This document shows, one piece after another, positions 1 to 61,697 of a DNA stretch of 64,000 bases. The DNA is taken from IMG/VR virus record IMGVR_UViG_3300027573_000779, positions 124,001 to 188,000 of that record; one strand, given 5' to 3'. Positions within the stretch are counted from its first letter, which is position 1; each line of letters opens with the position of its first letter. The translations under genes and the position numbers were made by a program. The notes under the pieces are model-generated. The model saw only the letters and a program-made list of their open reading frames with translations. It searched no databases and had not been told where the DNA came from.

Positions 1-2
1 TG

Positions 3-42857: not shown

Positions 42858-43064
42858 TTAAGACCCATTATCAAGGTAACTTATCAAAACATCATTCTGT
42901 GCTTGGTCCTTTACTTGGTCCCAAATTGAGTCATGAATTGGCCAAATTACGTTCCGAACTTGGTTCTCAACTTGGTCTGGAGTCTGGCCTTTAATTTGGC
43001 TTCTCATATGCCACATTTGGCTTCTGACGTGCTGTTGCCAAATTTGAACCTTTAAAGCATCCAT
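42858..43064 (-). CDS. DQVW-type tetrapeptide-repeat mini-protein
   Basis: QIWQQHVRSQMW...DQVENQVRN...DQVKDQ. Confidence 0.65.
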   Translation of the reverse strand: MDALKVQIWQQHVRSQMWHMRSQIKGQTPDQVENQVRNVIWPIHDSIWDQVKDQAQNDVLISYLDNGS

Positions 43065-43069
43065 TCCCT

Positions 43070-43219
43070 TTAATTAATACTATCAATTAGCTTACCAAGA
43101 ACAGAATTTTTATATCCACTCTCCGTTGCATCCATTACGAGACAGACCAACGGAAAAATTGTAATTGTACACACAATCAGCAAAAAAAGGATAATTATTG
43201 CTCTGGCAAAAACTCTCAT
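43070..43219 (-). CDS. 49-aa membrane peptide (missing from the ORF track)
   Basis: MRVFARAIIILFLLIVCTITIFPLVCLVMD...; fills the gap between its neighbours. Confidence 0.5.
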   Translation of the reverse strand: MRVFARAIIILFLLIVCTITIFPLVCLVMDATESGYKNSVLGKLIDSIN

Positions 43220-43955
43220 ATTAATCTTTTGTGTTTATGTTTTCTTCTAAACCCTTAACTATACATTCTGCCCATCGTGCGCCGAACCTCTTGTCATCAA
43301 GCTCCTTATCAATTTCCTTTAGAAAGGACTGAATGTCTCTGCCTAAACCATCAGGGTAGCCGTCGCCATGCCTATAGACAATGGCTCCAGTTGAATCGTC
43401 GCTGTAACAGAAATGAATTGTAGCTCTAGTTGACATATTTGGATTATACGATATCTTTTTAAAACGTCAAGCGCCCGTTAATGGTTCAAACGTCCTATCT
43501 TTAGGCCAACGGGCTAACCTATGGTCGTTAGCGTATTTTAGCCAAGCTTCTGCTTTTTCTTTATCCTTCCAAATATTCAAGGCAATCTGGCGCATTTCTA
43601 GGGCAGTTTGTTCCTCTTGATAATGCCACATATCCCTATCATCTGAGGACTTAATGTCACGCCAAGAAATCATATGCTCAAACGCCGCAGGGCTTTAGCT
43701 TTTCGTTTTTATAGGTTTCGCGCTTAGCCAGAGAGTTTGAACTTTCTTTGATTTGGGAAACAACTTATCTAAAATATTTTCTGCTTCTTTAATGTGATGT
43801 TCAAGCGCCGCCTTTGATTGTTCTTTATACTGGTCACTGGACTGAACGAAACTTTTATATAGCTGGACAATCATATCCAATCTACAGTTAGCGTTCTCAG
43901 TTTCGCGAATAAAATCTAAAGCGTTTGTCTTCATACTCTCAAGTGTCGCAGGGTT

Positions 43956-44108
43956 TTAATTCCAAAATGCAATTCCGTGGCTAAATTCTTCTAAATGAAG
44001 AGGGTTCATTTCAAGGTCATTTAAACCATGTATATCAATGTAGGCGATAGGCAAATCATCTTTAGCGCCGTTTTTCTCCAGCAATTCTTTAAGTTCTTTC
44101 CACGTCAT
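43956..44108 (-). CDS. 50-aa hypothetical protein (missing from the ORF track)
   Basis: MTWKELKELLEKNGAKDDLPIAYIDI...; own promoter upstream and a junction element right after the stop. Confidence 0.6.
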   Translation of the reverse strand: MTWKELKELLEKNGAKDDLPIAYIDIHGLNDLEMNPLHLEEFSHGIAFWN

Positions 44109-45206
44109 AAACAAGAGAATACGATATTTTTTTTATTCCGCAAGCTTTAACTTGGGTTAATAAAAGGATTAAACTTAGACTGAGAGTCAAGATTTCTATC
44201 TAAGATGCTCTGTTGCAACATCTTAATAGCTTCAACGCAATCAGCATCTTTAGGTCCGCGCCCTTTGTTCTTTTTAATGTGATTCCAGATTTTATCTGTA
44301 GCACAACACCAAGGAAGATTTGTATTCCAATCATTGTCTTCTTTTTGGAAGCCAATACCAACTGTGCCAAACTTGGGAAAACATACAATTGCCTGATTCT
44401 TACTAACTTTAACCCGCATCAACCAAAAATCTTCATCCAATGGAGGAGTTATTAAAAGTGTGTTGCCAAAAGGTTTTGGGTCTTGAATTTTGTTTGAATT
44501 AAGTTCAATTGTAAGTTTCATATTCAGATGATACAAAATCTTTTTTAAGAATCAAGCTCTTTTTTAGCTCTTATGTCTATCCCAAATCGACAATAGCCCG
44601 CCCAAGCTGGAATGTTTGAGGCTGAACAGACCTGTAAATTATGCCACTTATGGAATTCTTTGGGCCAATACTTAGGGTCTGCAAGCACTCCTAGCCTAAA
44701 GTGTTCCCGCGCCTCATTAGGAGAATCTGCTAGAATAAAACGCCGCTGGTTCTGATAGCAACCCCACTCGCCTGTAGTCAACAAGTGTTCACTGGTAAAA
44801 GTAACCATCCATCGCTTGTCAGGGGGATACAGCTTGATATCAATTGGGTTTTCATTCATATCCCAATCATATAATATCTTTTTTAACTGTCAACCTTGAA
44901 AATCTTCTCTAGGGGTTACCTTTATCTCAAGAGGAACAACCCAAAAAACCAACAAAAGGTCGCCATTGGGAACCTCTTCGAACCGTCCCACAGTCCAATT
45001 AAAAGATTTGTAATCTGCTAGCTTTTGCATCAAATGAGCGCCGCCATCTAGCGCCCCTTGCGGACTTTTACAGTTTAAGCCATACACATAAAAAGCCCCT
45101 ACTGATAAACCTCTGAAGTATACTGCCGTATATTCTCTGCTTGGAGTAATAATTGTTTTCATTGTTTTTGTATTCTACAACATCTTTTTTAACCCGCAAG
45201 CTTTTC

Positions 45207-45998
45207 TCATAACATGTTTATAGGTTTCAGCGCCCACCCGAATTGTTGGTTAACTTTAGAATAAAGCTCTCTAATCTCTTGTTCTGCTTTCTCAAGTCGT
45301 TCAAAATCAAGTGGATGTGCGTTTTTAACGTGGTCTCTAGCTTGATGATGCCCCGAATATTTACCCTTTAATAAGATTTGAGTATTACAAAATGAACATT
45401 TAAAGTATGTTTTCATCCTTGGCCCTAAAATCTTTTCTATTGACTGCCACCTTGTAAAAGCTTTCCCTATTAGTTTCTTCAGTCTATTGCGCCAATTGGT
45501 TATACGATACCTAGATTGATAGGGTCCGCTCATAAAAGTGCTGCCTTTTAAGAAAGTAAAAGTATCTAAAACCGCGCCGCTACAGAAGCTAATCTCATCT
45601 TTAAACTTAATTTTGTCACCCTTTTTAACCTTTACTGTTGACCGCTTCTTAATGTTCTCCCAACACCTATCGCGCCACTGTTGCGCCCATTCATAAGTTG
45701 TTGGTGTTAAAAGCTTTAGGATTCTTTCAGGACACTCAGATTCACAAGGTCCCATTTCCTCACTCATATCCTTGTAGCCAAAATTATAGTAATCGTGTGG
45801 TTTATAACCCAACAAGCACACAATACCAATAACGCTCTTTCTTGTGCCATCTTCGTTCAGACACTCATAAGCTAGGTAGGCTGTGCGATAACCCTTTACC
45901 GCGCAATCAATCACACACCCCTGTTTGCCATTGAATTCCTTCTCAAAGAATTCTCGAACTGAAACGCCTTGATTTTTGTTTGTAAATGTCCAACCCAT
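45207..45998 (-). CDS. DUF6927-like protein with an appended zinc-finger-like tail
   Basis: MGW..., NFGYKDMSEEMGPCESECPERILKLL; C-terminal CSFC...HVKNAH. Family name recalled from memory. Confidence 0.6.
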   Translation of the reverse strand: MGWTFTNKNQGVSVREFFEKEFNGKQGCVIDCAVKGYRTAYLAYECLNEDGTRKSVIGIVCLLGYKPHDYYNFGYKDMSEEMGPCESECPERILKLLTPTTYEWAQQWRDRCWENIKKRSTVKVKKGDKIKFKDEISFCSGAVLDTFTFLKGSTFMSGPYQSRYRITNWRNRLKKLIGKAFTRWQSIEKILGPRMKTYFKCSFCNTQILLKGKYSGHHQARDHVKNAHPLDFERLEKAEQEIRELYSKVNQQFGWALKPINML

Positions 45999-46554
45999 AT
46001 GCGCTCAAAAGCCGCGAGGCTTAGTAATTTTTTGGTTAACGCCGCAGGGCTTAATTGCCCTTAAAGCTATAGACAAGATACACTATCTTTTTAAACTGTC
46101 AACGCTCTATGAAAGGCTATGCTGTATATGAGCTAAGTATGAGGCTCTTTTAATCTTCTTCTCTGCTAGGTAAGCTGCCTTTCTCTCCCTTTTGTTTGGG
46201 AACAAAGAAAGCATAACGTCTTCGTGATTTGTGGAATTACCTAATGCGTAAAGAAGATTTTCGGTTTCAAATTGGGTTAATTGAAATGTAACTTTCATAT
46301 TGAATGCAAACCTGTTTTCTCAAGCTCTTCAGGACCAAAAGCAACATTTAACATATCAACCGTAACAGAATAGCAACCGTTTTCGGGTATTAGTCTATTT
46401 ACAACCCCACATTGACCTTTCCATGCGCCAGTGAGGATTCTAACCCTGTCGCCAATATTAAAGGATTGCTGTTCTTCTTTTGAGTCTTTATTCATCTGTG
46501 GGGATTATACAAAATCTTTTTAAAATGTCAATGCTCCAAAGCCGCAGGGCTTTT

Positions 46555-46712
46555 TAATATGAATTGAATATCTGTTGTAATTTGGTCCGCAATTGGGTCC
46601 CCAATTTTAACCAACTGTTCGGTCCCAAATGTGATTTTCAACTTGTTCTTGAACTTGGTCCCTAATTTCGTACCTAACTTGGTCTTCAAGTGTATCCCAA
46701 ACTTTCTTCCCT
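46555..46712 (-). pseudogene. Decayed DQVW-type gene
   Basis: VWDTLEDQVRYEIRDQVQEQVENHIWD with no start codon, then a frameshift. Flanked on both sides by junction elements. Confidence 0.55.
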
Positions 46713-47621
46713 ATTTATGCTCAGACGCCGCAAGGCTTAAAGTTTATTGGTATCACCATTACTTCAATTGGTTTAGAATGTTCGCTTGTCCCATAACCCA
46801 TCTTTAGCGCCGCCGCCCTAGATTTAAATAACTGGTGCGTGTTAGGCAAAAGCCATCTCTTTCTAAGTATATGTTGTGCTTTTTTATGGTGATAACTCTC
46901 ACACCAAGAACACCAAGGAATTTTCATATAGCCAGATTATACAAAATCTTTTTTAAGTGTCAATAATTTCCCGCCTATTGATAATCTTTATTCCCGAATG
47001 ATGACAGTGTGGACACTTTTCCTCTGCAACTTCCCCCGTTACTTTAAACTGTGTTCCACAATCACAAGTAAAAGGAGCATGTCTGTTAATATCAGAGAAA
47101 ACATCTACGGGCGCGTCCTGAAGGGTATAAATTCTTAAAAGACAGTCGCCTCCTTTCGATTGAGCTTCTTGTTCTAAGCCGCAACCGGGACAATGAATGA
47201 TAACTGTATCGAAACAACCCATATTAAGAGTATACTAAATCTTTTAAATTGTCAATCGTATTTGTTGAGCATTACGCTCAGGGCACATTTCTTTCTTACA
47301 CTTCATATATACGTCGAGTTCCACACTTAGGACACCAACCGCTTTCGTCAAGGTGACGCGCCTTACAAGTAGGACATATTTCTGTGGGATTTTCAAGCTT
47401 TTGGACAAGACCGCCCACCGAAACAATGCTCTTGTCTTCAATTTCTGCCTTCTTACGCAACCATTCAATTTCCGCGCTCTCCGCACTTTTAGCTGTCAAT
47501 TCCCTTACAATTTGCATAAGTGTTTGAAACGCAATGTTTTTGGTTGTACAAAGTCCATAAGACCTATTAACAAATTGTACTCCGTTGCGTTCAAAAGCTT
47601 CTTTAATTTCTTGTTCGGTCA

Positions 47622-47855
47622 TCACGATTCCTTTGTAACATAAGGCCAGTAGATAATATACTCTAATCCCATATTGTCTTGGCAGTATTGTTTTAGTTTC
47701 CTGTGTTTCTTGGCTAAATCAATCACCAACTGAGGATTGCCTGTTACAATTCCCATACATTGGCGACCAAACATTCCGCGCCCCGAATAATCATAGCGCA
47801 CTTCGCCGCCAACTTCTTCTGAGATTTCTTCAATGATTTTTTTGTTGGTTGTCAT
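47622..47855 (-). CDS. Conserved phage hypothetical protein (YSGRGM family)
   Basis: YDYSGRGMFGRQCMGIV...DNMGLEYIIYWP. True start MTTNKK; the longer N-terminus in the track is a shadow of the upstream repeat gene. Confidence 0.7.
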   Translation of the reverse strand: MTTNKKIIEEISEEVGGEVRYDYSGRGMFGRQCMGIVTGNPQLVIDLAKKHRKLKQYCQDNMGLEYIIYWPYVTKES

Positions 47856-47856
47856 A

Positions 47857-48081
47857 CTAAGTGTTAAAGTTTTTATCGTCTTCGGCTTCTTTCTGAGACT
47901 GGTTCCGAATTTGACTCCCGATTTGTTCCCAAATTTGTTCTCCAATCTGATTCTTGAAGTGTTTCCAAGTATATAGCCAAATATGATTCCCGGTTTGTTC
48001 CAATACTTGGTTATTAATGCTATCAGATACTTGCGATATCTGCTCCCAAACCGGCTCTTTTTTAAAGACAATAATATCCAT
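47857..48081 (-). CDS. DQVW-type tetrapeptide-repeat mini-protein
   Basis: VWEQI...NQIGEQIWEQIGSQIRNQ. Confidence 0.65.
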   Translation of the reverse strand: MDIIVFKKEPVWEQISQVSDSINNQVLEQTGNHIWLYTWKHFKNQIGEQIWEQIGSQIRNQSQKEAEDDKNFNT

Positions 48082-48451
48082 AAACACATCTGCTGCCATT
48101 TCGGGTGCAATCATGATTGTCATAAACAACCCCGTCAATAACAGCAACAAAATGTTTACTAACTTGACAAATTAGCTTACCTTTGGGTAGTTCATTAGCT
48201 CTCAAGTGAACTTTACAGCCTTGACCAATAAACATAGTTGGCACCCAAGTCCAACCCAAACTCTTTAAATAGGCTCTCAATACTGACCTTTTTACCCCTC
48301 CCTGATAGCCCTTTTTTGGCCGCAAAGCGTCATAAATCTCCTGATAAGGTTTACCAGTGACAATCGAAACAGCCCTAACAGAACAGTCACCCGTTTTGCC
48401 TTTGTAACCAGCATCAACTCTTCCTCCGTCTGTCAAAACAACATTGTTCAT
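48062..48451 (-). CDS. Putative papain-like/C39-like peptidase-fold phage protein
   Basis: GDCSVRA (Cys), KHFVAV (His) and VYDNHD (Asp). Start MNNVV 6 nt after TATTAT. Confidence 0.55.
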   Translation of the reverse strand: MNNVVLTDGGRVDAGYKGKTGDCSVRAVSIVTGKPYQEIYDALRPKKGYQGGVKRSVLRAYLKSLGWTWVPTMFIGQGCKVHLRANELPKGKLICQVSKHFVAVIDGVVYDNHDCTRNGSRCVYGYYCL

Positions 48452-48752
48452 GCTGCAATAATACAAAGTCTTTTTTAAAAATCAACCTAAAAATTCATTA
48501 CCGCAAGAGCATTTGTAAGTAACTTTAGAACCATTCTGAACAGTTATATAAGTGGTCCCCGGTGGAGGCCAAGGTCCATCATAATCAAGACTAAAATCCT
48601 TTGGCAAAACCTCTTCGTCATAAGTGATAGGTTCAGATTTAACTATTGCCTCAGGGCCAATTTCCTCTTGGCACTTTGGGCAAACCCTGATACCGTCATC
48701 AACCTCAGGGGGGTCATTCCAATAATCATTCATACTCTCAAGCGCCGAGGGG

Positions 48753-48803
48753 TTAAAAAAATTTAATATTCCGAACTTGGTCCCCAACTTGACCTTCGTT
48801 CAT
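48753..48803 (-). pseudogene. 16-codon remnant of a DQVW-type gene
   Basis: MNEGQVGDQVRNIKFF*, followed directly by a junction element. Confidence 0.5.
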
Positions 48804-50321
48804 AATATCGTTCAAAGTTTAATGTCTGGCCCACCAATACCCTTGATAATTCCGTTTTCAGCATAGGTAACATACAAAACATGTCTCTCTTCCTCTGAAA
48901 TGAGACCCGCATCGCCCAAGGCATCAACGTAACCCGCCAAATAAGGATTTGGAACTTGGTCCGACTCCTCATACATTTGGACCATAGCTTTTTCAATGAG
49001 GGTTATTGCGTGTTCTATGTTCATACTGCAAAGATACAGTATCTTTTTAAACCTGCAAGCCTTTTATTCATCGTTCCAACATTGGCACCTAGGATTGTTA
49101 GACGACCCACAATACTTGCAGTAACTTTCCCACAACCCCAATCTCTCTTCATCCGTTAAACCGGATATAAGAGTTTTGAGATTAGTAAAATTTGGTGGTT
49201 GAATGCTCAGCCAGTGCCCCCAATAGATAGGCACACAGTTCTTTTGCCATTTACTACACCAGCCAATTCTAGGATGGTCTCTATCTGTCCTAAGAATATC
49301 AATAGCCTTTAAAGCCTCATCTTTATAGTTCCGCCAATAACTTTTGGCATAATCCTCTAAAAGTTCAGTCAAATCTTGTTCGTCCTTTGGTGCACAACCA
49401 GTTTGAATAAACAAAACTTCCTTAATATCTACCCTACCCTCGCAAATATCTCTAATACAACAGGATAGAGAGAAACCTATTAAATGGCGTTCCAGTTCCA
49501 TAATTAAAAAAATTTTAAATAATTCGTTTGATTAATTTTAATGAGGGACACAAAGCAATCTTTGACCCGTTTAAAAGCTTAGGTTTGAAAAGCGTCTTTC
49601 GCTCGGTTCCTAACGCTTCCCAATTATTCCATACGTTCAAACAATCATCAACTGTTTTGGGTGCCCAATTTAAATCAGCCTTATGCTCAACTGATAATGT
49701 AAATACTTGTAACGAATCGACTTCCCAAAGCTGCGTATTAGAAGTAATCGTTAAATTGTTGTATCTTTCTTGACCATCCTCTAGGTTATGATAAGCAAAT
49801 AATGGAGTGTTGCGGACCTTAGGAAAAGTTTCTATATTAGGAATATATTCGACCACTCTAAAGTTCATCCCTTCTGTCTTTAAATGTGGAGTCCATGAAT
49901 AAAGCTTTCCTTCAAATTCTTGAACAAGTTTGTAAACTACCATAAAAAAGGCATGATACAATATATTTTTTAAACCGCAAGCATTATTTGTCTACAGAGA
50001 TTGAAAGATAGACAGGATAGTTGATACCAGCTTCGCTATCAGGAAAAAGGTCGCGTAATATTCTCTCTGCGTAAACATATGTCTCTCCACCCTCACCATC
50101 CTTCTTATCGAACCAATTCCAACCTCTAGAATGAGGGGTCACCCAAAGTTTATGGCCTTTTATTCTTTTGGTTGAGACCGTTATTTTGATGTGGCGAGGC
50201 TCTTTACCTAGTAACCTATACACAAAACCCGCACATATCGCCATGTGGTCGTTATGCCAGTAAGCGCCGTCATCTAAGGTAAGAAAAAAAGTCAGTTTAC
50301 TAATCAATTTTCTCATGGGGC

Positions 50322-50528
50322 TTATTTTATTCCTGCTTTTCTGTTTTCTTTCATTAATTCAATACTATTAACTTGTTGACTAAAAGAGGAAAAAGGACTC
50401 CAATTAGTAACTAAATAAAAATCTCGAAGAAAAACCAAACCCTCACTCAAAACATTTAGTTATTCGTCCGACAAACATTCGCCCCTTTCCCAAGAGTTAA
50501 ACAGTGTGGCTACATCTTTTCCGTTCAT
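50322..50528 (-). pseudogene. Small gene with one in-frame TAA
   Basis: MNGKDVATLFNSWERGECLSDE*LNVLSEGLVFLRDF...AGIK*; internal stop at 50460-50462. Confidence 0.5.
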
Positions 50529-53435: not shown

Positions 53436-53684
53436 TCAAAATGAGTTTTTGGTAGTTACAAAAACTTGTTCCATAATTTGGAGTCGAACCTGTTCTTGGG
53501 TTTGTTCCCAACCTCTTTCTAATTGGTCCCAAACTTGGTTTCCAACTTGGTTTCCAATTTGATTGCTAAAGTGATACCTAATTTGATTTAGAATTGTTAA
53601 ATATTTTTTATCCATTTCACAAACAGGTCTAAGACAAAAACCATACCGAATGCTAAAACTAATATTAATATAATGTACATTCAT
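53436..53684 (-). CDS. DQVW-type tetrapeptide-repeat mini-protein
   Basis: NQIGNQVGNQVWDQL...EQVRLQI. Confidence 0.6.
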   Translation of the reverse strand: MNVHYINISFSIRYGFCLRPVCEMDKKYLTILNQIRYHFSNQIGNQVGNQVWDQLERGWEQTQEQVRLQIMEQVFVTTKNSF

Positions 53685-53896: not shown

Positions 53897-54766
53897 TTAG
53901 ATTGGTTCTTTGATAAGTTTCGTATACATCAATAGGGTCGCTGGCTGTCCAAGGCATTAAAATAAAATTAATTCCAAATGGGTGATACATTTCCATTTTT
54001 TCTTTGTCTGTTGCCTCGTCTAAATAGCCAGCCACATACCAATCCAGCCCTTCAAATGGGTAGGCCCAGTTTTTTCCTTTCTTATCCGGCCTGTGTCCTA
54101 CGACATAAATTCTATCTCTGTCGTTTCGTTTATAACGCGCCCCTTCCCATTGGTCCGAACCAATCTTTACTTTAACTGGTTGCACGTCAAAACACCCACA
54201 TTGTTCTAACCATTCTTTTAAAGTCATATGCTCAAGCGCCGCAGGGCTTAGTTTATTCTAATTCCCACCATTCGGGGTCCACTTCTGCCAAAGCTTTACC
54301 TAAGTCACTAGGAAAAACAACGGCAATATCATAAACGGGATTTTCTTTACCTTCACTATCTGATTCTGTCAAACTCAAACCCCTATGATTCAGAGTTAGG
54401 TTAGAGACTTTCTTAAAAAATGTTTCTAATTTGGCTTTATCGTGTTCTTTCATATGCTCAAGCGCCGCAGGGCTTAGTTTTATTTATAATAAGTCTGAAT
54501 ATAGGCATCTGCCACCTGTTTGAAATAGCTAAAAATTCGCTCTTTTGTTTGTTCTGTTCCGTCGCCGCTCATATTAACAGTTACGCCTCCAATCTTGAGA
54601 GGCTTTACTTTACCATCCCTAAAAAGCCTCAAAAAACGCGAAACTGTCATCAGTTCAACCCACCTACGTTCAGGGGTCTTGATTTCGACCTTGAACTTCT
54701 TCACCTTTGGAAGGAAGTTGGCTACCAACGTAATTGATATCATGAAACGATGATAGCGGGTCTTTT

Positions 54767-54961
54767 TTAAAAATCAAGTCGATTGCTCAAGCCGCTCCTA
54801 AAAATTTCACTTACAATTTGGTCCCAAATTTGCCCCTTAACTTGGTTCCAAGTTTGTCCTCCAATTTGGCTCCCAACTTGTTTCCAAACTTGCTCCCAGA
54901 CTTGGTCCCCAACTTGGCTCCAAACTTGGTCTATAATCCTTTCTTTAATTATTTGGGTCAT
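54767..54961 (-). CDS. DQVW-type tetrapeptide-repeat mini-protein
   Basis: DQVWSQVGDQVWEQVWKQVGSQIGGQTWNQVKGQIWDQI. Confidence 0.75.
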   Translation of the reverse strand: MTQIIKERIIDQVWSQVGDQVWEQVWKQVGSQIGGQTWNQVKGQIWDQIVSEIFRSGLSNRLDF

Positions 54962-54967
54962 AAAGGC

Positions 54968-55192
54968 TTAAATTTGGTCCCAAATTGCGTCCTCAAGTTG
55001 TTTCCGAAGGTTGTCCCAAAGTTGTTCCCTAAGTGGATTCCAAACTTGTATAACCTGCATCCAAATTGGGTCCCAAACCTGTTCATCAAGCTGACTTTTA
55101 ACTTGGTCCCCAACTTGGTCCCAAATAATCTTACGAATCTCAATATCGGTTTGGTACCAATCCTCCGATAATTTGTCTAGCATCATTTTCAT
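54968..55192 (-). CDS. DQVW-type tetrapeptide-repeat mini-protein
   Basis: IWDQVGDQVKSQLDEQVWDPIW. Confidence 0.7.
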   Translation of the reverse strand: MKMMLDKLSEDWYQTDIEIRKIIWDQVGDQVKSQLDEQVWDPIWMQVIQVWNPLREQLWDNLRKQLEDAIWDQI

Positions 55193-55514
55193 TTATTAAA
55201 ACTTTTTTAAAAATCAATCACAAAAAGAAACTAAGGAATTCTTGGTGGCAGTGGTAAAACAATTCCTAATTTAGTAAGGGCTTGTTCATCTGTATTGTTC
55301 AACCCGTTATAAATCACTTTTGTAGCTATATAAAGACACTCGGCTTGTGTCCAATCTGGAAACCTTTTCTCTAAAGAATCACAAAATCTATCCCTTAATT
55401 CTTCAACAGGTATGGGATTAGATTTAGAAACAAATGTAAAAGCAATTTTGAAAACCACGTCTGCTAAAATTTCAGAATTATCACTTAAATCTTTTAAAAT
55501 TTTTGGTGAAATTT

Positions 55515-55730
55515 TCATAACCATATTTGCTCAAGAACTTGGTTCCGAACTTCCATGAAAACGTCATTCCTTATTTGTTCCCTAGATGGGTTTCCAACAT
55601 GCTTCATAACTTGGCTCCCAATCTCAGTTCGGTCCCCAACTTGGTCCATAACGTGGTCCCAAACTTGGTCCATAACGCGGTCCCAAACTTGGTCCACAAC
55701 TTGATACTGAATTTTGGTGACTAAGCTCAA
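55515..55730 (-). CDS. DQVW-type tetrapeptide-repeat mini-protein
   Basis: DQVWDRVMDQVWDHVMDQVGD. Confidence 0.75.
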   Translation of the reverse strand: MSLVTKIQYQVVDQVWDRVMDQVWDHVMDQVGDRTEIGSQVMKHVGNPSREQIRNDVFMEVRNQVLEQIWL

Positions 55731-56027
55731 TCAATCCGCTTTTGTTTCAACTTCTTCAATAGAATATTCAGGTAAAGCTTTATTAATCCGCAGTTTAACG
55801 CGCTCTATAATTGGTTTTACCACATCGGGCGCTCTGGCTACGGTTTTGAGTTTATTAGCTCTACCTATAGCTACCCGTAAACCAAAGTCTCTGTTAAACG
55901 AGTCTCCAGCATCAATATTGGTATAGCTCCAGCCAATATGAACCGTTTTGCGGTCATGGTCTTCTACTCCCGCCACAATGCCGCGCCTTTGATTTGTTTT
56001 GGGGTCTCTGACAAATTGAATAAACAT
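55731..56027 (-). CDS. Conserved phage hypothetical protein
   Basis: HIGWSYTNIDAGDSFNRDFGLRVAIGRA pattern; own promoter. Confidence 0.65.
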   Translation of the reverse strand: MFIQFVRDPKTNQRRGIVAGVEDHDRKTVHIGWSYTNIDAGDSFNRDFGLRVAIGRANKLKTVARAPDVVKPIIERVKLRINKALPEYSIEEVETKAD

Positions 56028-56065
56028 ATCTGTATTTTAAATATTTTTTTTAAAAAAGCAAGCAA

Positions 56066-57061
56066 TTAATAGTCCTGATTTAAAATCTTGACCGACAGTG
56101 ATTTACCAAGAATTGGGGAATATTTGGGCGTTATTGGTCGCAAAACAATCCCCTCTGCCTTGCGCTCTTGTCCTGTAGATGTGAGATAAATAGCCTTGTT
56201 AGCTTCTTCCTGAAGCCGCGCCATGGTCCAAGTATCATCAAATGTAAAAGGTTCACTAACAGGAATAACCACAGGAATTTGCAATTGGTTGCATAACTCA
56301 TTTATTTCCTGCCAGTTATACCATTTGCCAGTATCAAATTCTTTAACATTAAAGACAAACATCTGAAAACTGTTCAGGCCCAATGGGTTACCTTGAATTT
56401 TGCCCCCGCAAGCCTCTGCTTGAATAGCAATGTTTTTACCCAACTCTTTAAGCTTAGAAGTTAGATTATATTGGTCTGCAATCTTCCAAAAGCCGGTCCC
56501 TTCTTTTTGCTCCAGCCGCCGACTGCAAACGCGAACTTCACCGTTTTCATAAATCACAGTCATTGAAGAACCGTCAGCTTTGATAGTTAAATAACAAAGT
56601 TCATTCCTAAACTCTTCTAAAATCTCTGGATAGTTTTGAATGTTTTCTTCGTCTGTAATTGAGATTAAATGAGTAGGAAAAGAACCCTTGGCGTCTCCAT
56701 TAACAGAAGAATCAATAGGTTTGTCGTATTTTAAAATACCTAAAGCTTCCGAAACGTCCGAACCTTCTTCAACCTGATAGTTATAGCTTGGAATGATAGT
56801 TAAAGGGCAAACTAAACCCTGAGAAGGAGAGCCGCGAAACTTGGCGTTCCAGACACGATATTTTTGCCTTTCTAAAAAACTAAAATAAGAATTCGCGCTA
56901 GGAACAATAGAGTCAATACGAATAAACACCACTAAATCGCCGTTTTTATATTCTCCCTTCTTAACCACAACAGGCCATTCTTTAATTTTGGCGACTTCAA
57001 GAGAGTCGGCGTTGAAATGTGGTTGGACGCTATGAATTCGTTCAATTGTGGCTAATTTCAT
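56066..57061 (-). CDS. RNA ligase, DRB0094/Rnl5-like family
   Basis: KLATIERI...GDLVVFIRIDS N-terminal OB-like domain; motifs TIKADGSS, IQAEACG, FVFNV, EGIVLR and SVKILN. Confidence 0.9.
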   Translation of the reverse strand: MKLATIERIHSVQPHFNADSLEVAKIKEWPVVVKKGEYKNGDLVVFIRIDSIVPSANSYFSFLERQKYRVWNAKFRGSPSQGLVCPLTIIPSYNYQVEEGSDVSEALGILKYDKPIDSSVNGDAKGSFPTHLISITDEENIQNYPEILEEFRNELCYLTIKADGSSMTVIYENGEVRVCSRRLEQKEGTGFWKIADQYNLTSKLKELGKNIAIQAEACGGKIQGNPLGLNSFQMFVFNVKEFDTGKWYNWQEINELCNQLQIPVVIPVSEPFTFDDTWTMARLQEEANKAIYLTSTGQERKAEGIVLRPITPKYSPILGKSLSVKILNQDY

Positions 57062-57071
57062 TTTAAAAGGT

Positions 57072-57097
57072 ACCCACTAGCGAACTGGCTAGTGGGT
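57072..57097. terminator. 10-bp hairpin in the RNA ligase leader (terminator-like)
   Basis: ACCCACTAGC/GCTAGTGGGT; long T-run on the + side and a weak one on the - side. Confidence 0.55.
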
Positions 57098-57251
57098 GGT
57101 TTTTTTTACCTTTACTTAACAAGCCTGCAAACCAACAAACAGGTTAATTTGCAGCGTCTTCCCCGAAGACATTTTAATGATATCAAGCCTTTCTAAAAAG
57201 TCAATCTCTCAAGTGCCGAGGGGCTAAGTTTTCGCTAAGTGCGCCGCAAGG

Positions 57252-57503
57252 CTAATCTTTTTGGTGAACTTTAAATGCTAGTATCTTAGTGGGGTTTGGA
57301 CAACGCCAACCGTCAGTAATACACTCATATCCAAGAGTCCTCAGAACTGTTCTAAAAGTATTTGTTTCACTTAATGATAGTTCTACCGCATCGCCCACAT
57401 TCATTGTGTTCGCTAAAGTAATGAGATTCTTTAAGGTTTGTTCTCTTGAACCCCTTCCTTTAGGAATGGGTAAATTTTTATGTATCGTAAAACTTTTAAC
57501 CAT
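57252..57503 (-). CDS. Small putative DNA-binding protein
   Basis: IHKNLPIPKGRG...MNVGDAV pattern common in small phage proteins. Confidence 0.5.
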   Translation of the reverse strand: MVKSFTIHKNLPIPKGRGSREQTLKNLITLANTMNVGDAVELSLSETNTFRTVLRTLGYECITDGWRCPNPTKILAFKVHQKD

Positions 57504-57951
57504 TCGTTTTATGGTAAAGGTAACATTTTACTTGGGATTAGCCTAAATCTATCTTTTTTGTTTTTGCTTTGAATATATCTTTTAATATCATCGTGTCTTC
57601 CATAAATACCCCTTTCAGAGTATTGATAAGGCTCCCATGCACCGTATCCATCCCAATCGGTACAAAACTCAATTACTATCTGAAAAACGGGCGCTTTTAA
57701 GTGAACCCATTTTCCTAGCTTAGAATCATAAACATGTACTCCAGCATTATCATAATATTTTTTGCGCTCTATTTCTTTATAGGTTGTGCCGCCTTTATTG
57801 CCACATTTCGGACAATATTCCCAAGGGTCTTCAATATTTAAAGTAAACTGTTTATGGCAGCTTAAGCATTTAAAACGAGCATAATGGCCATCTCCATGGT
57901 CTTCTTGCCATTTGGGACTAATTTGTAATAAAGTTCTCATACAGGGCTATT

Positions 57952-58176
57952 TTATTTTTGGTCCCAAACTTGGTCCTCAACTTGGTCCCAAACTTGGCCC
58001 TGAACTTGGTCCCAAACTTGGTCCCGAACTTGGTCCCGAACTTGGTCCCGAACTTGGTCCCGAACTTGGTCCCGAACTTGGTCCCAAACTTGGTCCCAAA
58101 CTTGGTCCCAAACTTGGTCCCGAACTTGGTCCCGAACTTGGTCCCAAACTTGGTCCTCAACTTGACCCTCAATCAT
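57952..58176 (-). CDS. DQVW/DQVR protein encoded by a near-perfect 12-bp tandem array
   Basis: About 17 units of GACCAAGTT(T/C)GG; ATG at 58176. Confidence 0.7.
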
Positions 58177-58189
58177 AAAGATTTAGTTT

Positions 58190-58315
58190 TTAATTCCTCA
58201 ACTTGCCAATAAACTTGGTCTTTAATTTGTTACCATTAACTTGGTTCCAAACTTGGTCCCCAACTTGGTTCCGAACTTGGCCCCAAACTTGGCCCCAAAC
58301 TTGGTCCGCGTTCAT
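58190..58315 (-). pseudogene. DQVW-type gene with a frameshifted 3' part
   Basis: MNADQVWGQVWGQVRNQVGDQVWNQVNG, after which the repeat continues in another frame (QIKDQVYWQVEE). Confidence 0.55.
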
Positions 58316-58344
58316 AAAAGAAGGGTAGCCCCGCAAGGCTACCC
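58316..58344 (-). terminator. Rho-independent terminator after the DUF932 gene
   Basis: GGGTAGCC/GGCTACCC stem followed by TTCTTTT on the - strand. Confidence 0.85.
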
Positions 58345-58353
58345 CAAATTAAC

Positions 58354-59358
58354 CTAATTTTTTGGCAAGGTTAAGTCCTGTAGGAGTAAATCAGTAGCCC
58401 TCTGTTTGAGATTAGCTCCAGTACCAAGTAGCGCCGATTCAAACTTTGCTTCCTGTCTATTAGCTCCTTCTTCTGCTCTGGTGCTTCTTTTTTGGTCAAC
58501 AAATTCAGTTATACTGTTTAGGTAATCATACCTTGTCTCGCCTACATTCCCTGTGCCACGCTGAAAAAGTTCTGTTACCTGCTCTCGAATATTCTCAGTT
58601 CTTGAGCTACATTCATAAAGTCCAGTTTCCTTATTCAATTTCCCCGGAAACAAGGTTTCATTGTACCTAACTACCTCTTCTTCATTGCATTTCTGGTCTT
58701 TGAGCATTTTCAAGACTAGCTCCAGCCGCCCAAAATAACCATAAGCAATTCCGAGCGCCCTTTGAACTTCCTCTTTGTGACTCTTAAAACTTTTGGTATG
58801 GCGCATCTTAACCTGATTCTTTGCGCCTTTTAGGGCTGCATTAAGGGTGTTTTGACAGACTACCCGCACCGCTACATTCTGCATCCATACTGAGTGCGTA
58901 CCATCGTGGCTTGAAATCATCAAAATCCACTTGTCCATCTTATCGCTAGGGTCAATATACATGGTTTCTGGCAGCTTGGCCATAATCCAGATTTTGCGCC
59001 CCTCTCTTAAAGACCCCGCAGTCTCATAAACTGCCTGACCTTCAGAAATAACCGAATCAAAAAATTCAAAAGCTTCCTCGTTTTGGACTGGCGTATATCG
59101 ATTACCTACCACTCCCAGTTTAACCCCATTGTCCTCCCTTACAACAGCTTTATAATCTTCAAATTCAGAAAGACCACTCTCTGTCTGAATAAAAATTGGC
59201 TCTTTGCGAACCCTCCAATCCAAATGCGCCAATTGGATTGCTTCTTTGGCTGTAACTGTTCCTTTGACAACGCTTCCCAATGAATGCCAAGGAACTATAT
59301 TATTACCGCTAAAAGTTTCCGCAGTGCCGTCTTCTCTAATTGTTATTTCGTGTGACAT
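58354..59358 (-). CDS. DUF932 (TIGR03299-like) phage/plasmid protein
   Basis: PWHSLG, YTPVQNEEAFEFFD, YETAGSLREGRKIW, SSHDGT, VRVVCQNTL and RHTKS. Confidence 0.92.
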   Translation of the reverse strand: MSHEITIREDGTAETFSGNNIVPWHSLGSVVKGTVTAKEAIQLAHLDWRVRKEPIFIQTESGLSEFEDYKAVVREDNGVKLGVVGNRYTPVQNEEAFEFFDSVISEGQAVYETAGSLREGRKIWIMAKLPETMYIDPSDKMDKWILMISSHDGTHSVWMQNVAVRVVCQNTLNAALKGAKNQVKMRHTKSFKSHKEEVQRALGIAYGYFGRLELVLKMLKDQKCNEEEVVRYNETLFPGKLNKETGLYECSSRTENIREQVTELFQRGTGNVGETRYDYLNSITEFVDQKRSTRAEEGANRQEAKFESALLGTGANLKQRATDLLLQDLTLPKN

Positions 59359-59846
59359 ATTGTTTTACAAGTTTGTTTATCTGTCTACAGCATAACAAAT
59401 CTTTTTAAACCGTCAACAGGTTTCTTTTGAAAGTCTCCCCACTGCTTTTTCAAGTGCAACCATCTTAACCTCAAGTGGTTGCCCAGTCAAAAAAGCAACC
59501 AAAAGAGATTGAGACAAATCTTCTATTATCACATCAGCCTCTTTTGGAGGAGTAGTACGAGTTTGTGTCCTAATTTTAGACAGGCAGTTCTTCATTGTTT
59601 CTTTATAAAAATTACGCTCTCTTCAAGCCCGAAAGCCCAAAGAAAATTATTCCAACCTCTGTGTCCTAGTCCGCGCATTTTCCAGACTATTCTTTTAGTA
59701 TCATGAGCATTTTTGATTAACCAGTCTTGTTTTTGTTCTCTAGACCAGTTAACGTTGTATATTTCATCCACAGGAAAGAATCTTGTGTTGTCAGCTAAAA
59801 AATCTTCAATTTCTGGTAAATTTGGCATTGCTCAAGCGCCGCAAGG

Positions 59847-60035
59847 CTAGTTTATTTTTAGGTCTCTAACTTGGTCCCAAATTTGTCCCACAACTTGGCT
59901 TCTAAATTGGTCCTGTATTTGGCTTTGGCCCCAAATTTGTTTCTTGGTTTCATGCCCAACTTGGTCCCAAATTTCGCTCCAAATTTGGTCCCAAACTTGG
60001 TCCCGAACTTGTCTTTTTATTAAATTACTATTCAT
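59847..60035 (-). CDS. DQVW-type tetrapeptide-repeat mini-protein
   Basis: [20 protein letters not shown]; ends KIN*. Confidence 0.75.
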   Translation of the reverse strand: MNSNLIKRQVRDQVWDQIWSEIWDQVGHETKKQIWGQSQIQDQFRSQVVGQIWDQVRDLKIN

Positions 60036-60328
60036 TCAAATAATCATCGGGATTAACTTCTTCGCCAACATCGTCTTCTTCAGTTAAAGGAGAACCACAA
60101 ATAGCACAAATTTCTTCTAAAAGCGAATAGCTGCTATGCGCTCCGCCATCTCCCTCTTGAACCAATACTTCAACCAGTTTATAGACGCGCCAATTGACTA
60201 ACTCTGCTAATACTGGCAAGTCTTCCTTGGTAGGAGGCCAACAAGAGGCGCAAAGGTCTAAATGTTGGTCGTTAAGTCTTATTCTAGGCATCTCTCAAGC
60301 GCCGAGGGGCTAAGTTTTCGCCGCAGGG

Positions 60329-60535
60329 CTAGTTTATTTTTATGTTCCAAATGTGTTCCACAACTTGGCCTTCTACTTCTTCCCCAACTTCTTCCCAAAC
60401 TTGGCCCCAAACTTGTTCAAAAACCTGTTCCCAAACTTGACCTTCTACTTGGTCCCAAATTTGTTCCCCAATATGGTTATGAACTTGGCTCCTAATTTGG
60501 TCATCAATTTGCTTCCTAATGTTATCTTTCGTCAT
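60329..60535 (-). CDS. DQVW-type tetrapeptide-repeat mini-protein (MTxDxI subfamily)
   Basis: MTKDNI...EQIWDQVEGQVWEQVFEQVWGQVWEEV; ends KIN*. Confidence 0.75.
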   Translation of the reverse strand: MTKDNIRKQIDDQIRSQVHNHIGEQIWDQVEGQVWEQVFEQVWGQVWEEVGEEVEGQVVEHIWNIKIN

Positions 60536-60826
60536 TAACGCGCCGATTTAAATTCTGGTATTTCCATCCAATGCGCCCGAACTGAAGGTAAAGCTATTGT
60601 ACTCGTATAAGTTAAATCATTGTCCGTCATAACAATAATTTTTGTGCCTTGCTGCTCCCATCTTCCAGTAATTTGCTGCCATCCCTCTTTCCGTTTAAGA
60701 GACCAAAGAACGGTGGTTTTTTGTGGAGGTTTCTCTTTCTCGAAATTCTTCCAAATCATAAAAACGATGATAATAAAAGTTTTTAAAATGTCAATGCTCA
60801 AGCGCCGCAGGGCTTAAGCCCTTTTT

Positions 60827-61060
60827 TTAAAACGCCGAGGGGCTAAGCGCCATAGGGGGTTCTGTGTTCCAAGCTTGGTGCCAAATTTGGTTTTCTACTT
60901 GGCTCCCAATCTGTTCCCAAACTTGGTCCCAAATCTGTTCCCAAACTTGGCCCCAAACTTGGCCTTCTATTTGGTTCCAAATTTGGTCCCCAATATGGTG
61001 GTCCCCAATATGGTCCCTAACTTGGTCCATAACTTGGTTCTGAATGTTGTCTCTTGTCAT
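60827..61060 (-). CDS. DQVW-type tetrapeptide-repeat mini-protein (MTxDxI subfamily)
   Basis: MTRDNIQNQVMDQVRD...GQVWEQIWDQVWEQI. Confidence 0.75.
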   Translation of the reverse strand: MTRDNIQNQVMDQVRDHIGDHHIGDQIWNQIEGQVWGQVWEQIWDQVWEQIGSQVENQIWHQAWNTEPPMALSPSAF

Positions 61061-61074
61061 GTTCTTAAGGAGGG

Positions 61075-61284
61075 CTAGGTTTCACTAAAACATTTATTTG
61101 AAATTTGTATCATAACTTCATGCCGTAATTGGTTCCAGTGTTCCTGACCTTGGTAAACTTGGTCCCCAACTTGGTTCCAAACTGCTTGGTTCCCAACTAG
61201 GTTTTGAATACTCTTAAAAGTTTGCCCCAAAACGCCATTATATAACTGATGATGTAACTGATTCTCAATCTTATTTCTAGTCAT
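61075..61284 (-). CDS. DQVW-type tetrapeptide-repeat mini-protein
   Basis: MTRNKIENQ...VWNQVGDQVY. Confidence 0.65.
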   Translation of the reverse strand: MTRNKIENQLHHQLYNGVLGQTFKSIQNLVGNQAVWNQVGDQVYQGQEHWNQLRHEVMIQISNKCFSET

Positions 61285-61486
61285 GTGTCTCTAAAACTTG
61301 GTCCCCAACTTGGGTCCTAACTTGGTTCCGAATTTCTTCTAAAGATGGATGTAAAAAACGTCGCCCCCAAAGTAACGGGTGCGAAGTCGGGTCTTGGATT
61401 TGATTATAAATTTGCTTCAAAATTTGGTCCCAAGTTTGGCCCCAAACTTTTGCGAACACCTGACTCTTAATCTCATCTTTGGTCAT
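61277..61486 (-). CDS. DQVW-type tetrapeptide-repeat mini-protein
   Basis: True start MTKDEIKSQV; GQTWDQI...NQVRTQVGDQV. Confidence 0.65.
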   Translation of the reverse strand: MTKDEIKSQVFAKVWGQTWDQILKQIYNQIQDPTSHPLLWGRRFLHPSLEEIRNQVRTQVGDQVLETHD

Positions 61487-61490
61487 GTTT

Positions 61491-61697
61491 TTAGTAAATT
61501 TTGCTGCACCGAAAAACTTGGTACAAAATTTCATTTTTAATTTCATACCTTATTTGTGGGTCCCAATAATCCTGAATTTGGTTATGAACCTGCTTGCTAA
61601 TTTGGTTGCCAGCTTGGTTGAACAACGGTCTTACAACAAGTTCCGAAGTTTGACCCCGAACAAAAGCATCCTGATTCTCAATCTTATCTTGGGTCAT
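61491..61697 (-). CDS. DQVW-type tetrapeptide-repeat mini-protein
   Basis: MTQDKIENQ...NQISKQVHNQIQDYWDPQI. Confidence 0.6.
   Translation of the reverse strand: MTQDKIENQDAFVRGQTSELVVRPLFNQAGNQISKQVHNQIQDYWDPQIRYEIKNEILYQVFRCSKIY

What the first reader, a model, noticed from the sequence alone, without database searches (positions are those of the whole stretch)
42858..61697. Expansion of about 17 tetrapeptide-repeat (DQVW) mini-genes
Seen: 40-80 aa ORFs built on [DNEG]-Q-[VI]-[WRG], dispersed in the array and often flanked by the junction element, with a tandem MTxDxI subfamily at 60329-61697. Codons are very uniform (CAA, GTT/ATT, NGG), so the 12-mer GACCAAGTTTGG is also a dispersed DNA repeat that could promote recombination. 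Intact, frameshifted and vestigial copies coexist, indicating birth-and-death turnover. I have met similar repeats in other phage hypotheticals but know no function. Inference: an acidic, Trp-studded amphipathic helix family acting as diversified decoys or inhibitors of host defence sensors, or selfish passengers of the cassette system.
Basis: partly seen in the sequence, partly recalled or inferred. Interest (0 to 1): 0.75.

Follow-up and report, generated by a model that had tools for sequence, protein, structure and literature searches.

The report
Phage tetrapeptide-repeat mini-protein family
A 209-kb groundwater phage carries about 22 small genes built from a variable four-residue repeat (x-Gln-Val/Ile-x), the same repeat that forms a long helical stalk inside an uncharacterised phage protein family (DUF6745); here the stalk appears to have been split off and multiplied as separate mini-genes, with function still unknown.

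Summary
Seventeen copies lie in window 42858-61697, all on the minus strand, and five more lie beyond the window. They are intact, frameshifted or vestigial.

The DQVW frame is the real coding frame. Within this phage, synonymous sites are more uniform than the first bases of the variable codons, and the antisense P-N-L-V frame is open. Relatives settle the question: they keep x-Q-V-x with different codons, and their other frames carry stops.

The repeat is not an orphan. A search of 1.84 billion proteins gave 416 hits. Most of the top hits checked are 350-590 aa phage proteins built as N-domain, (xQVx) array of about 25-67 units, then C-terminal DUF6745.

Stand-alone mini-genes recur in other phages, with 46 in tandem in a 369-kb phage. 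They co-occur with an array-less DUF6745 gene, often adjacent to it. Phages whose DUF6745 carries the array have no mini-genes.

AlphaFold2 predicts helical hairpins for both forms.

Function is untested. My best inference is early-expressed, diversified binding modules that work with the DUF6745 body in host or defence interaction. Mycobacteriophage Tweety gp54 is an analogue, not a homologue.

The parts
42858..43064 (-). Mini-gene, 68 aa, ATG start, 6 degenerate xQ[VI]x units
   Evidence: The exact protein is in the public collection (P0001) and is called by JGI.
46528..46689 (-). Vestigial, frameshifted copy. The ORF reads in the T-K-F/L-G frame, with period-12 cores at 46637-46660. Hairpin elements lie on both sides (46534 and 46720).
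   Evidence: Not called by JGI.
47857..48081 (-). Mini-gene, 74 aa (MDIIVFKKEPVWEQISQV...), 7 Q[VI] units, overlapping the 3' end of the upstream gene
   Evidence: JGI calls a 74-aa gene at exactly these coordinates (L227 4984-5208).
48771..48794 (-). Two-unit remnant of the repeat, directly upstream of a hairpin element and the start of the next gene
   Evidence: (family D10)
53436..53684 (-). Mini-gene, 82 aa. The N-terminal part is non-repeat; 7-8 units lie in the C-terminal half.
   Evidence: JGI 82 aa
53681..53896 (-). Mini-gene, 70-71 aa, GTG or TTG start, 6-7 degenerate units
   Evidence: JGI 70 aa
54767..54961 (-). Mini-gene, 64 aa (MTQIIKERIIDQVWSQVG...), 10 units. Used as the query for the large protein search.
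54968..55192 (-). Mini-gene, 71-74 aa, 6-8 units
55515..55730 (-). Copy with a TTG start only, 71 aa, 8 units. Not called by JGI and possibly decaying.
57952..58176 (-). Mini-gene, 74 aa, made of 17 near-identical units (DQVW and DQVR alternate through T/C at unit base 10). This is the youngest expansion. One other assembly has a 42-aa version.
58190..58336 (-). Frameshifted copy. Six units in the DQVW frame are followed by three units in the T-K-F-G frame. No ATG at the ORF start.
   Evidence: Not called by JGI.
59847..60035 (-). Mini-gene, 62 aa, 9 units. A hairpin element follows directly (59831-59847).
60329..60535 (-). Mini-gene, 68 aa (MTKDNIRKQI...), 10 units. AlphaFold2 predicts a two-helix hairpin.
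60827..61060 (-). Mini-gene, 77 aa (MTRDNIQNQV...), 11 units
61075..61284 (-). Mini-gene, 69 aa (MTRNKIENQL...), degenerate units
   Evidence: (P0002)
61277..61546 (-). Mini-gene. JGI aa. An internal MTKDEIKSQV start at 61486 would give 69 aa and fits the subfamily.
61491..61697 (-). Mini-gene, 68 aa (MTQDKIENQ...), degenerate units. Its start overlaps the upstream nucleotidyltransferase gene.
   Evidence: (P0003)

Best explanation
Shown:
- The ORFs are real minus-strand protein-coding genes.
- They form a paralogous family of about 22 small proteins (41-89 aa).
- Each is built from a tetrapeptide unit [D/N/E/S/G]-Q-[V/I]-[W/R/G/E]. Q and V/I are fixed and the two x positions vary freely.
- AlphaFold2 predicts that each folds as a two-helix hairpin.
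- The unit is the same one that forms the central array of phage DUF6745 proteins (N-domain, about 25-67 units, C-terminal DUF6745 domain). There the array is predicted to be a long helical hairpin stalk on a globular body.
- This phage's own DUF6745 gene (just outside the window) has lost the array, and three mini-genes sit directly upstream of it.
- Phages with stand-alone mini-genes carry an array-less DUF6745 gene, often next to or inside the mini-gene cluster. Phages with an array inside DUF6745 have no mini-genes.

Inferred:
- This is the split form of one system. The variable stalk has been separated from the body and amplified by duplication and 12-bp slippage.
- The genes are expressed with the neighbouring small early-type genes from sigma-70-like promoters.
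- The mini-proteins act as a diversified set of binding modules. The conserved Q-V face would pack the hairpin and the variable x1/x4 face (Trp, Arg, Gly, acidic residues) would make contacts.
- They act either in trans with the DUF6745 body or directly on host proteins, most plausibly in host take-over or counter-defence.
For: Repeat real and strand-specific.

Coding frame. Q-V is kept with different codons in other genomes:
- this phage: GAC-CAA-GTT-NGG
- L092: GAT/GCT-CAG-GTC-NGG
- L093: AAT-CAA-GTG-NGG
- L097: TCA-CAA-GTN-NNG
- G012: GMC-CAA-GTC-NNC
. In L097 the in-phase antisense codon of TCA is the stop TGA. The minus strand of that region has about 370 stops per frame, while 46 sense ORFs stay intact, most overlapping the next by 8 nt. 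JGI and ENA annotations call the minus-strand frame.

Link to DUF6745. phmmer gave 416 hits at E<=1e-3 and 90 at E<=1e-10. Of the four long top hits scanned, three match PF20530 above Pfam's cut-off (E 6e-18 to 2e-28) and one matches it only weakly (P0006, 17 bits). x4 is R/G/W-dominated across the 150 listed hits.

Split versus fused:
- There is one array-less DUF6745 gene in this genome.
- DUF6745 is present in 7 of 10 other mini-gene-bearing records. The three negatives are fragments only 4-11% complete.
- The five whose sequence I read have no array. Three more were judged array-less only from their length of 297-307 aa.
- DUF6745 is adjacent to or embedded in the mini-gene cluster in L097, L174 and L103.
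- Five fused records have exactly one array each.
- The nearest DUF6745 relative (45% identity) is fused and has no mini-genes within 10 kb.

Fold. Mini-protein: helices 3-29 and 35-67, pLDDT 78. Fused protein: helices 62-128 and 139-185 between well-modelled N and C domains.

Early-type context. Of 13 strong promoter-like sites, 11 are on the minus strand, and all 13 have a 16-18 nt spacer (16 nt in 12 of them). Neighbours include an RNA ligase, a macro domain, an RlaP nucleotidyltransferase and rIIB.
Against: - There is no expression evidence. No RNA run was listed.
- Inside this genome the unit is open in all six frames, and its synonymous sites are unusually uniform. On this genome alone a DNA-level or antisense reading could not be excluded.
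- A crude per-column pN/pS is about 1 at x1 and x4, so positive selection is not demonstrated.
- Array helices in the fused model have low confidence (pLDDT 46-71). The ESM Atlas model of one mini-protein is poor (pLDDT 0.62).
- A physical interaction between mini-proteins and the DUF6745 body was not modelled or tested.
- DUF6745 has no known function, no solved structural relative and no literature.
- The sampling behind split versus fused was conditioned on finding an array, so base rates are unknown.
Confidence: 0.55

Rival explanations
1. The mini-proteins act as stand-alone inhibitors or decoys, independently of DUF6745. Each paralogue would bind a different host defence or housekeeping protein. 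Some of the acidic copies might act as nucleic-acid mimics.
For: - They are small early-region proteins.
- About half are acidic, with pI 4.0-5.3.
- Trp, Arg and acidic residues occupy the variable positions.
- Most copies in this phage lie 8-27 kb from the DUF6745 gene.
- The functional analogue Tweety gp54 is a counter-defence protein (PMC9262239).
Against: The co-occurrence and adjacency with array-less DUF6745, and the complementary fused form, argue for a shared system. Charge is not uniform, with pI up to 10.45. No target is known.
Confidence: 0.2
2. The copies are functionless or selfish repeat debris. The 12-bp unit would spread by slippage and illegitimate recombination. The ORFs would stay open only because the unit has no stop in any frame, and the products would have no role.
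For: - The unit is open in all six frames here.
- Frameshifted, vestigial and start-less copies exist.
- Synonymous sites are homogenised.
- pN/pS is about 1 at the variable positions.
Against: - Q and V/I are strictly kept.
- N-terminal caps are conserved in frame.
- 46 of 46 tandem copies are intact in L097, where the other frames do carry stops, and they have conserved termini and coupled starts.
- The same architecture recurs in unrelated phages.
Confidence: 0.13
3. The element acts at the nucleic-acid level. The conserved core CCAAGTTnGG would be a DNA site array (protein binding or a recombination hotspot), or an RNA structure, and translation would be incidental.
For: - Third codon positions of the variable codons carry more information than their first positions.
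- D is GAC 52 times and GAT 0 times, against 61% GAT genome-wide.
- Contigs of three samples break in the array or join across copies.
Against: - The DNA core is not conserved between genomes, whereas the peptide is.
- Base 10, which would pair in a CCAAG/UUNGG helix, is the most variable base.
- The longest exact match between different copies is 27 nt.
- The contig joins are what a k=31 assembler does at repeats.
Confidence: 0.07
4. The true reading frame is the in-phase antisense (plus-strand) frame P-N-L-V. In that frame the common variants W/R/G, V/I, D/N and CAA/CAG are all synonymous (CCN, AAY, GTY, YTG).
For: The substitution pattern in this genome fits it. Plus-strand ORFs of up to 117 aa span the arrays, for example 54818-55171.
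Against: - In relatives the antisense reads PDLI, PHLI or contains TGA stops, so it is not conserved.
- GTC is a rare Val codon here, at 10%.
- There are no ATG starts.
- 11 of the 13 strong promoter-like sites and all called neighbouring genes are on the minus strand.
Confidence: 0.02

Closest known systems
Central tetrapeptide array of DUF6745 (PF20530; PHROG 31813) phage proteins
   Same: - The repeat unit and residue preferences are the same: x1 is D/S/N/A/G/E, then Q, then V/L/I, and x4 is R/G/W/E.
- Both show within-array codon homogeneity with variable first and second bases at x1 and x4.
- Both have a predicted helical hairpin.
- Both occur in phage early or accessory regions.
   Different: The mini-proteins have no N-terminal or C-terminal DUF6745 domain and give no PF20530 match. 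They are multi-copy, with about 22 here, instead of one array per genome. The DUF6745 family itself has no known function and no literature.
Mycobacteriophage Tweety gp54 (AA[G/W/Q][S/Y] tetrapeptide repeats; tunable counter-defence against Phrann gp29/gp30)
   Same: - Both have in-frame 12-bp units with two fixed and two variable residues.
- In both, third codon positions are invariant while first and second positions vary, including a G/W alternation.
- In Tweety the repeat number changes and alters function.
- Both are non-structural phage genes.
(PMC2884959, PMC9262239; sequence read.)
   Different: - There is no homology. Tweety gp54 has no Pfam match, and BLASTP aligns only the periodic W/G pattern.
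- The fixed pair is Ala-Ala, not Gln-Val.
- It is a single gene with flanking unique domains, not a multigene family.
Diversity-generating retroelement (DGR) variable regions
   Same: Variation is concentrated at particular codon positions. The codon choices (NNC at x1, NGG at x4) mostly avoid stop codons on mutation.
   Different: No reverse transcriptase is encoded in the genome. There is no template repeat, and the variation is not adenine-specific.
Pentapeptide-repeat proteins (PF00805)
   Same: Both are short-period repeat proteins. Some pentapeptide-repeat proteins act as DNA mimics.
   Different: The period here is 4, not 5. The prediction is alpha-helical, not a beta-helix, and there is no Pfam match.
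Multigene-family expansions ('accordions') of host-interaction genes in large DNA viruses
   Same: Both show tandem or dispersed amplification of a small host-interaction-type gene in accessory regions of large genomes, with turnover. Examples here are about 22 copies in this phage and 46 in L097.
   Different: This is an analogy from general knowledge only. No selective driver has been shown here.

Membership tests
DUF6745 (PF20530) protein family | Match to the about 206-position C-terminal DUF6745 domain above 27 bits | tested here: not met
   None of 10 mini-proteins matches PF20530. The phage's separate 339-aa gene does match, at 52.9 bits.
DUF6745 (PF20530) protein family | Central xQ[V/L/I]x tetrapeptide array.
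   phmmer with mini-protein 54767-54961 hits the arrays of DUF6745 proteins at E down to 4.8e-36.
DUF6745-associated split module (proposed here) | An array-less DUF6745 gene in the same genome as stand-alone array mini-genes | tested here: met
   for this phage. Seven of 10 other mini-gene-bearing records have DUF6745, including all three complete ones, so all four complete genomes counting this phage. Fused records have one array and no mini-genes.
Tweety gp54-like tetrapeptide-repeat counter-defence proteins | Sequence homology of the flanking N- and C-terminal regions and the AA[GWQ][SY] unit | tested here: not met
   no shared domain and a different unit.
Tweety gp54-like tetrapeptide-repeat counter-defence proteins | Repeat-number changes that switch counter-defence activity | not testable with these tools
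   There is only a hint. One assembly has 9 instead of 17 units in the 57952-58176 array, two have 17, and contigs break in the array.
DGR target genes | A cognate reverse transcriptase and template repeat in the genome | tested here: not met
   No PF00078 match in the 208,933-bp genome.
Pentapeptide repeat (PF00805) | Five-residue period and a Pfam match | tested here: not met
   The period is 12 nt, which is 4 residues. No Pfam match.

The most novel reading that the evidence does not exclude
The mini-genes and the DUF6745 body together form an unrecognised phage system. A library of interchangeable, hypervariable helical-hairpin adaptors would retarget one common effector or sensor body to many host proteins, such as defence proteins. 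New specificities would be generated by 12-bp unit shuffling and by mutation at codons chosen so that changes rarely create stops (NNC at x1, NGG at x4). Fused and split architectures would be alternative states of this system.
Probability: 0.15. Interest if true: 0.9.

Novelty: new variant of a known kind. Interest (0 to 1): 0.62.

Why it matters
Variable tetrapeptide-repeat proteins have one studied precedent in phages. In Tweety gp54, repeat number tunes counter-defence.

This work shows a much larger, unrelated class with the same design logic:
- It is found in hundreds of phage proteins (DUF6745).
- It exists in two complementary architectures, fused and split or amplified.
- Stand-alone copies reach 46 per genome in very large phages.

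It gives a concrete handle on a domain of unknown function. The variable hairpin is likely the specificity element and the conserved body the constant part.

It also gives several simple tests: co-expression, pull-downs, defence-library screens and long-read measurement of array length.

Finally, it is a cautionary example. Uniform synonymous sites in a repeat need not mean a DNA-level function.

Tried and rejected
- Pfam and PHROGs scans of the mini-proteins gave nothing significant.
- Megablast of 20 kb against cultured phages found no match.
- The word-indexed protein search with 60827-61060 found no candidates. Exact look-up found only 3 of 10 proteins in the collection, although the genes are called.
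- Loci related through the neighbouring DUF932 gene were at most 38% identical and carried no repeats. No close relative was available for orthologue dN/dS.
- Contigs of three samples were identical outside the array, so there were no population SNPs. They break inside the array, so its length is unresolved.
- No RNA run was listed.
- The antisense P-N-L-V frame and the shifted T-K-F-G frame were considered seriously and rejected on cross-genome evidence.
- A crude Nei-Gojobori pN/pS per repeat column gave about 1 at x1 and x4. It is not informative enough to claim positive selection, so I dropped that claim.
- The DGR mechanism is rejected because no reverse transcriptase is present.
- Tweety gp54 homology is rejected.
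- Fold searches of the fused DUF6745 model found nothing informative: Foldseek on PDB gave nothing at E<=0.001, VIA-align wide gave only generic coiled coils at Z<=5, and AFDB gave only DUF6745 or unnamed proteins.
- A profile-based locus search with alignment A2 failed because no conserved stretch was available.
- A precomputed 'AcrVA2-like' label on the gene upstream of the three mini-genes beside DUF6745 was not reproduced by my Pfam scan. I do not rely on it.

Full report
**Source and setting.** The window is bases 124001-188000 of a 208,933-bp IMG/VR virus record that CheckV rates complete. Near-identical contigs occur in one groundwater and two freshwater-sediment metagenomes. Cultured phages give no megablast match. 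From about window position 30 kb onward, past the end of the window, the genome is a run of more than 100 small minus-strand genes. Of the 13 strongest sigma-70-like promoter matches in 42.5-62 kb, 11 are on the minus strand, and 12 of the 13 have a 16-nt spacer. Recognisable neighbours are an RNA ligase, a macro domain, an RlaP nucleotidyltransferase, DUF932, an AAA protein and rIIB. This looks like an early or accessory region.

- GACCAAGTTTGG with up to 1 mismatch occurs 37 times, all on the minus strand, against 0.33 expected.
- Period-12 arrays are found at each stated place.
- A genome-wide scan finds runs of three or more consecutive xQ[VI]x units almost only on the minus strand between genome 166.9 and 201.5 kb.
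- I count 17 copies in 42858-61697: 13 called as genes by JGI, one uncalled TTG-start ORF, one frameshifted copy and two remnants.
- Five more copies lie beyond the window.
- The MT-x-D-x-I subfamily at 60329-61697 has five members.

- Among 173 in-frame units, Asp is GAC 52 times and GAT never (GAT is 61% genome-wide). Val is GTT in 81 of 89 cases. The fourth codon is NGG: TGG 49, CGG 14, GGG 14, AGG 8.
- In a slightly narrower set of 147 units, the third bases of the two variable codons are 69% C and 71% G, against 15% and 14% genome-wide. The first base of codon 4 is almost random, at 0.11 bits.
- The common variants are all synonymous in the in-phase antisense frame P-N-L-V, which is open.

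Relatives settle it.
- The same x-Q-V-x peptide is written GAT/GCT-CAG-GTC-NGG in L092, AAT-CAA-GTG-NGG in L093, GAT/AGT-CAA-GTC/GTT-NGG in L094, TCA-CAA-GTN-NNG in L097 and GMC-CAA-GTC-NNC in G012.
- The antisense reading changes between genomes (PNLV, PDLI, PHLI), and in L097 it is a TGA stop.
- In L097 each minus-strand frame of the region has about 370 stops, while 46 sense ORFs stay intact.

The conserved object is therefore the peptide in the DQVW frame. The uniform synonymous sites reflect homogenisation of units within each array, together with free or favoured change at the first two bases of the x1 and x4 codons. Pham et al. described the same pattern for Tweety gene 54 (PMC2884959). 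A crude per-column pN/pS is 0 at Q, 0.3-1.1 at V/I and about 1 at x1 and x4. I therefore claim relaxed or diversifying change at x1 and x4, not proven positive selection. No reverse transcriptase is present, so this is not a DGR.

**What the repeat belongs to.**
- phmmer of mini-protein 54767-54961 against 1.84 billion representatives gave 416 hits at E<=1e-3 and 90 at E<=1e-10.
- The top hits are 350-590 aa. Those I read have an N-terminal domain, an array of some 25-67 units and a C-terminal domain. Three of the four long hits scanned match PF20530 (DUF6745) above Pfam's cut-off, at E 6e-18 to 2e-28. The fourth matches it only weakly.
- Across the 150 listed hits, x1 is D/S/N/A/G/E, position 3 is V/L/I, and x4 is dominated by R, G and W.
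- Their contigs look like phage, and the ESM Atlas places DUF6745 mostly in Uroviricota.
- DUF6745 has no paper in the searched library, PHROG 31813 is of unknown function, and fold searches of an AlphaFold2 model find only other DUF6745 or unnamed proteins.

**Stand-alone mini-genes elsewhere.** A codon-neutral DNA pattern of five period-12 CARGT cores hit at least 120 IMG/VR loci. After translation these fall into three groups.
- 17 are DUF6745 proteins with arrays.
- Many are unrelated simple repeats.
- About a dozen loci carry stand-alone mini-genes like those here.

The extreme case is L097, from a 368,758-bp phage. It has 46 tandem mini-genes of 29-198 aa in 12.8 kb, with conserved MNNKLINDQV-type starts and SQLELHE-type ends, most overlapping the next gene by 8 nt. 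L174 has at least eight, L103 and L212 have four, and L100 has three (up to 14 and four at a looser threshold).

**Split versus fused.**
- This genome has one DUF6745 gene (genome 192755-193780, window-equivalent 68755-69780). It keeps only a two-unit vestige (WEQINSQI) where relatives have the array. Three mini-genes lie directly upstream of it.
- All five other mini-gene-bearing records tested first also have one DUF6745 gene, and so do two of five further records. The three negatives are fragments only 4-11% complete.
- The five of these genes whose sequence I read lack arrays. Three more are array-less judging only by their length of 297-307 aa.
- The DUF6745 gene lies inside the mini-gene cluster in L097 (6689-7690) and L174, and immediately before the four mini-genes in L103.
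- Conversely, five records with an array-bearing DUF6745 have exactly one array and nothing else.
- The closest relative of this phage's DUF6745 (45% identity, L231) carries about 18-20 SQV[E/R/W] units in the gene and has no mini-genes within 10 kb.
- No record showed both states. The sampling was conditioned on finding arrays, so the frequency of array-less DUF6745 without mini-genes is unknown.

**Structure.** AlphaFold2 with the 12 paralogues predicts mini-protein 60329-60535 as a two-helix hairpin (helices 3-29 and 35-67, mean pLDDT 78). The ESM Atlas model of another copy is poorer, at pLDDT 0.62. For a fused protein (P0041, 106-sequence alignment) the N and C domains are confident (pLDDT above 90). 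The array forms two long antiparallel helices, 62-128 and 139-185, at pLDDT 46-71. On a helix, Q and V lie on one side and x1 and x4 on the other, so the variable residues would form an exposed face. This last point is geometric inference from the sequence, not read from the models.

**Mechanism.**
- Shown: a protein-coding paralogous family, the identity of the unit with the DUF6745 array, complementary split and fused architectures, predicted helical hairpins, and an early-type context.
- Inferred: the mini-proteins are detached, amplified copies of the variable stalk. They serve as a diversified set of binding modules, either docking on the DUF6745 body or acting on host proteins, probably in host take-over or counter-defence. 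The only experimentally studied analogue is Tweety gp54, where repeat number tunes counter-defence (PMC9262239). It is not homologous.
- Copy-number plasticity of the youngest array (57952-58176) is only hinted at. The gene is 74 aa in two assemblies and 42 aa in one, and short-read contigs break there.

**Rivals.** These are stand-alone inhibitors, functionless repeat debris, a nucleic-acid-level element and the antisense frame. Each is set out in its own section with the evidence for and against.

**Verdict.**
- It is a new variant of a known kind, namely variable tetrapeptide-repeat phage proteins and the catalogued but unstudied DUF6745 family.
- Interest is moderate to high. The biology is unknown but now concretely testable.

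Noticed in passing
window 34079-60794, minus strand (e.g. 46504-46531, 46936-46963, 43443-43470, 44866-44893): A conserved block of about 28-38 nt precedes many small genes. On the minus strand it reads TTGACA, 16 nt, TATAAT.
   Followed up: partly
window 35434-60813 and genome 189053; e.g. 54231-54247, 54457-54473, 59831-59847, 60797-60813: A GCCCTGCGGCGCTTGAG-type small hairpin element occurs 16 times genome-wide, allowing up to 3 mismatches. Fifteen copies are on the minus strand within genome 159-189 kb. It usually ends a few bases before the next ATG (..CTTGAGCATATG). Seven copies lie directly 3' of a tetrapeptide-repeat copy. Its role is unknown; RNA processing, translation or a recombination junction are possibilities.
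   Followed up: partly
window 1-7649 (+), continuing from genome 115240: A single open frame of 5,469 aa (genome 115240-131649) carries many repeats of a G-[KR]-[VI]-P-N-F-A motif. It looks like an exceptionally long tape-measure-type protein.
   Followed up: no
window 57952-58176: The ENA assembly of the same phage (208,805 bp) encodes 42 aa here instead of 74 aa, which is 8 units fewer. A third assembly is 208,883 bp. This could be assembly collapse or real copy-number variation.
   Followed up: partly
window 60818: A 2-nt deletion variant is carried by a contig in all three samples, within the palindrome AGGGCTTAAGCCCT followed by a T-run (60809-60822).
   Followed up: no
L097:4191-17022 (IMGVR_UViG_3300025162_000016, 368,758 bp): There are 46 tandem tetrapeptide-repeat mini-genes, most overlapping the next by 8 nt, with an array-less DUF6745 gene embedded at 6689-7690. 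At x4, Gln is CAG 28 times and CAA 8 times, while the fixed Gln is CAA 694 times and CAG 16 times. The third base of the variable codon is therefore held at G whatever the amino acid.
   Followed up: partly
G012:C1:5027-5415 (record of L108): In this fused DUF6745 array the variable codon is NNC (CAC, CGC, CTC, AGC, ATC, giving H/R/L/S/I) instead of NGG. The rule seems to be a fixed third base with variable first two bases, not a fixed W/R/G set.
   Followed up: no
genome 194393-195400 (L095:6393-7400, minus strand), outside the window: The gene just upstream of the three mini-genes next to DUF6745 carries a precomputed PF26125 'AcrVA2-like' label in the contig table. My own Pfam scan gave no hit at E<=0.001.
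   Followed up: partly
window 54818-55171 (+): A 117-aa plus-strand ORF in the antisense P-N-L-V frame runs across two adjacent minus-strand mini-genes. It is a by-product of a repeat unit that has no stop in any frame, and a trap for gene callers.
   Followed up: yes
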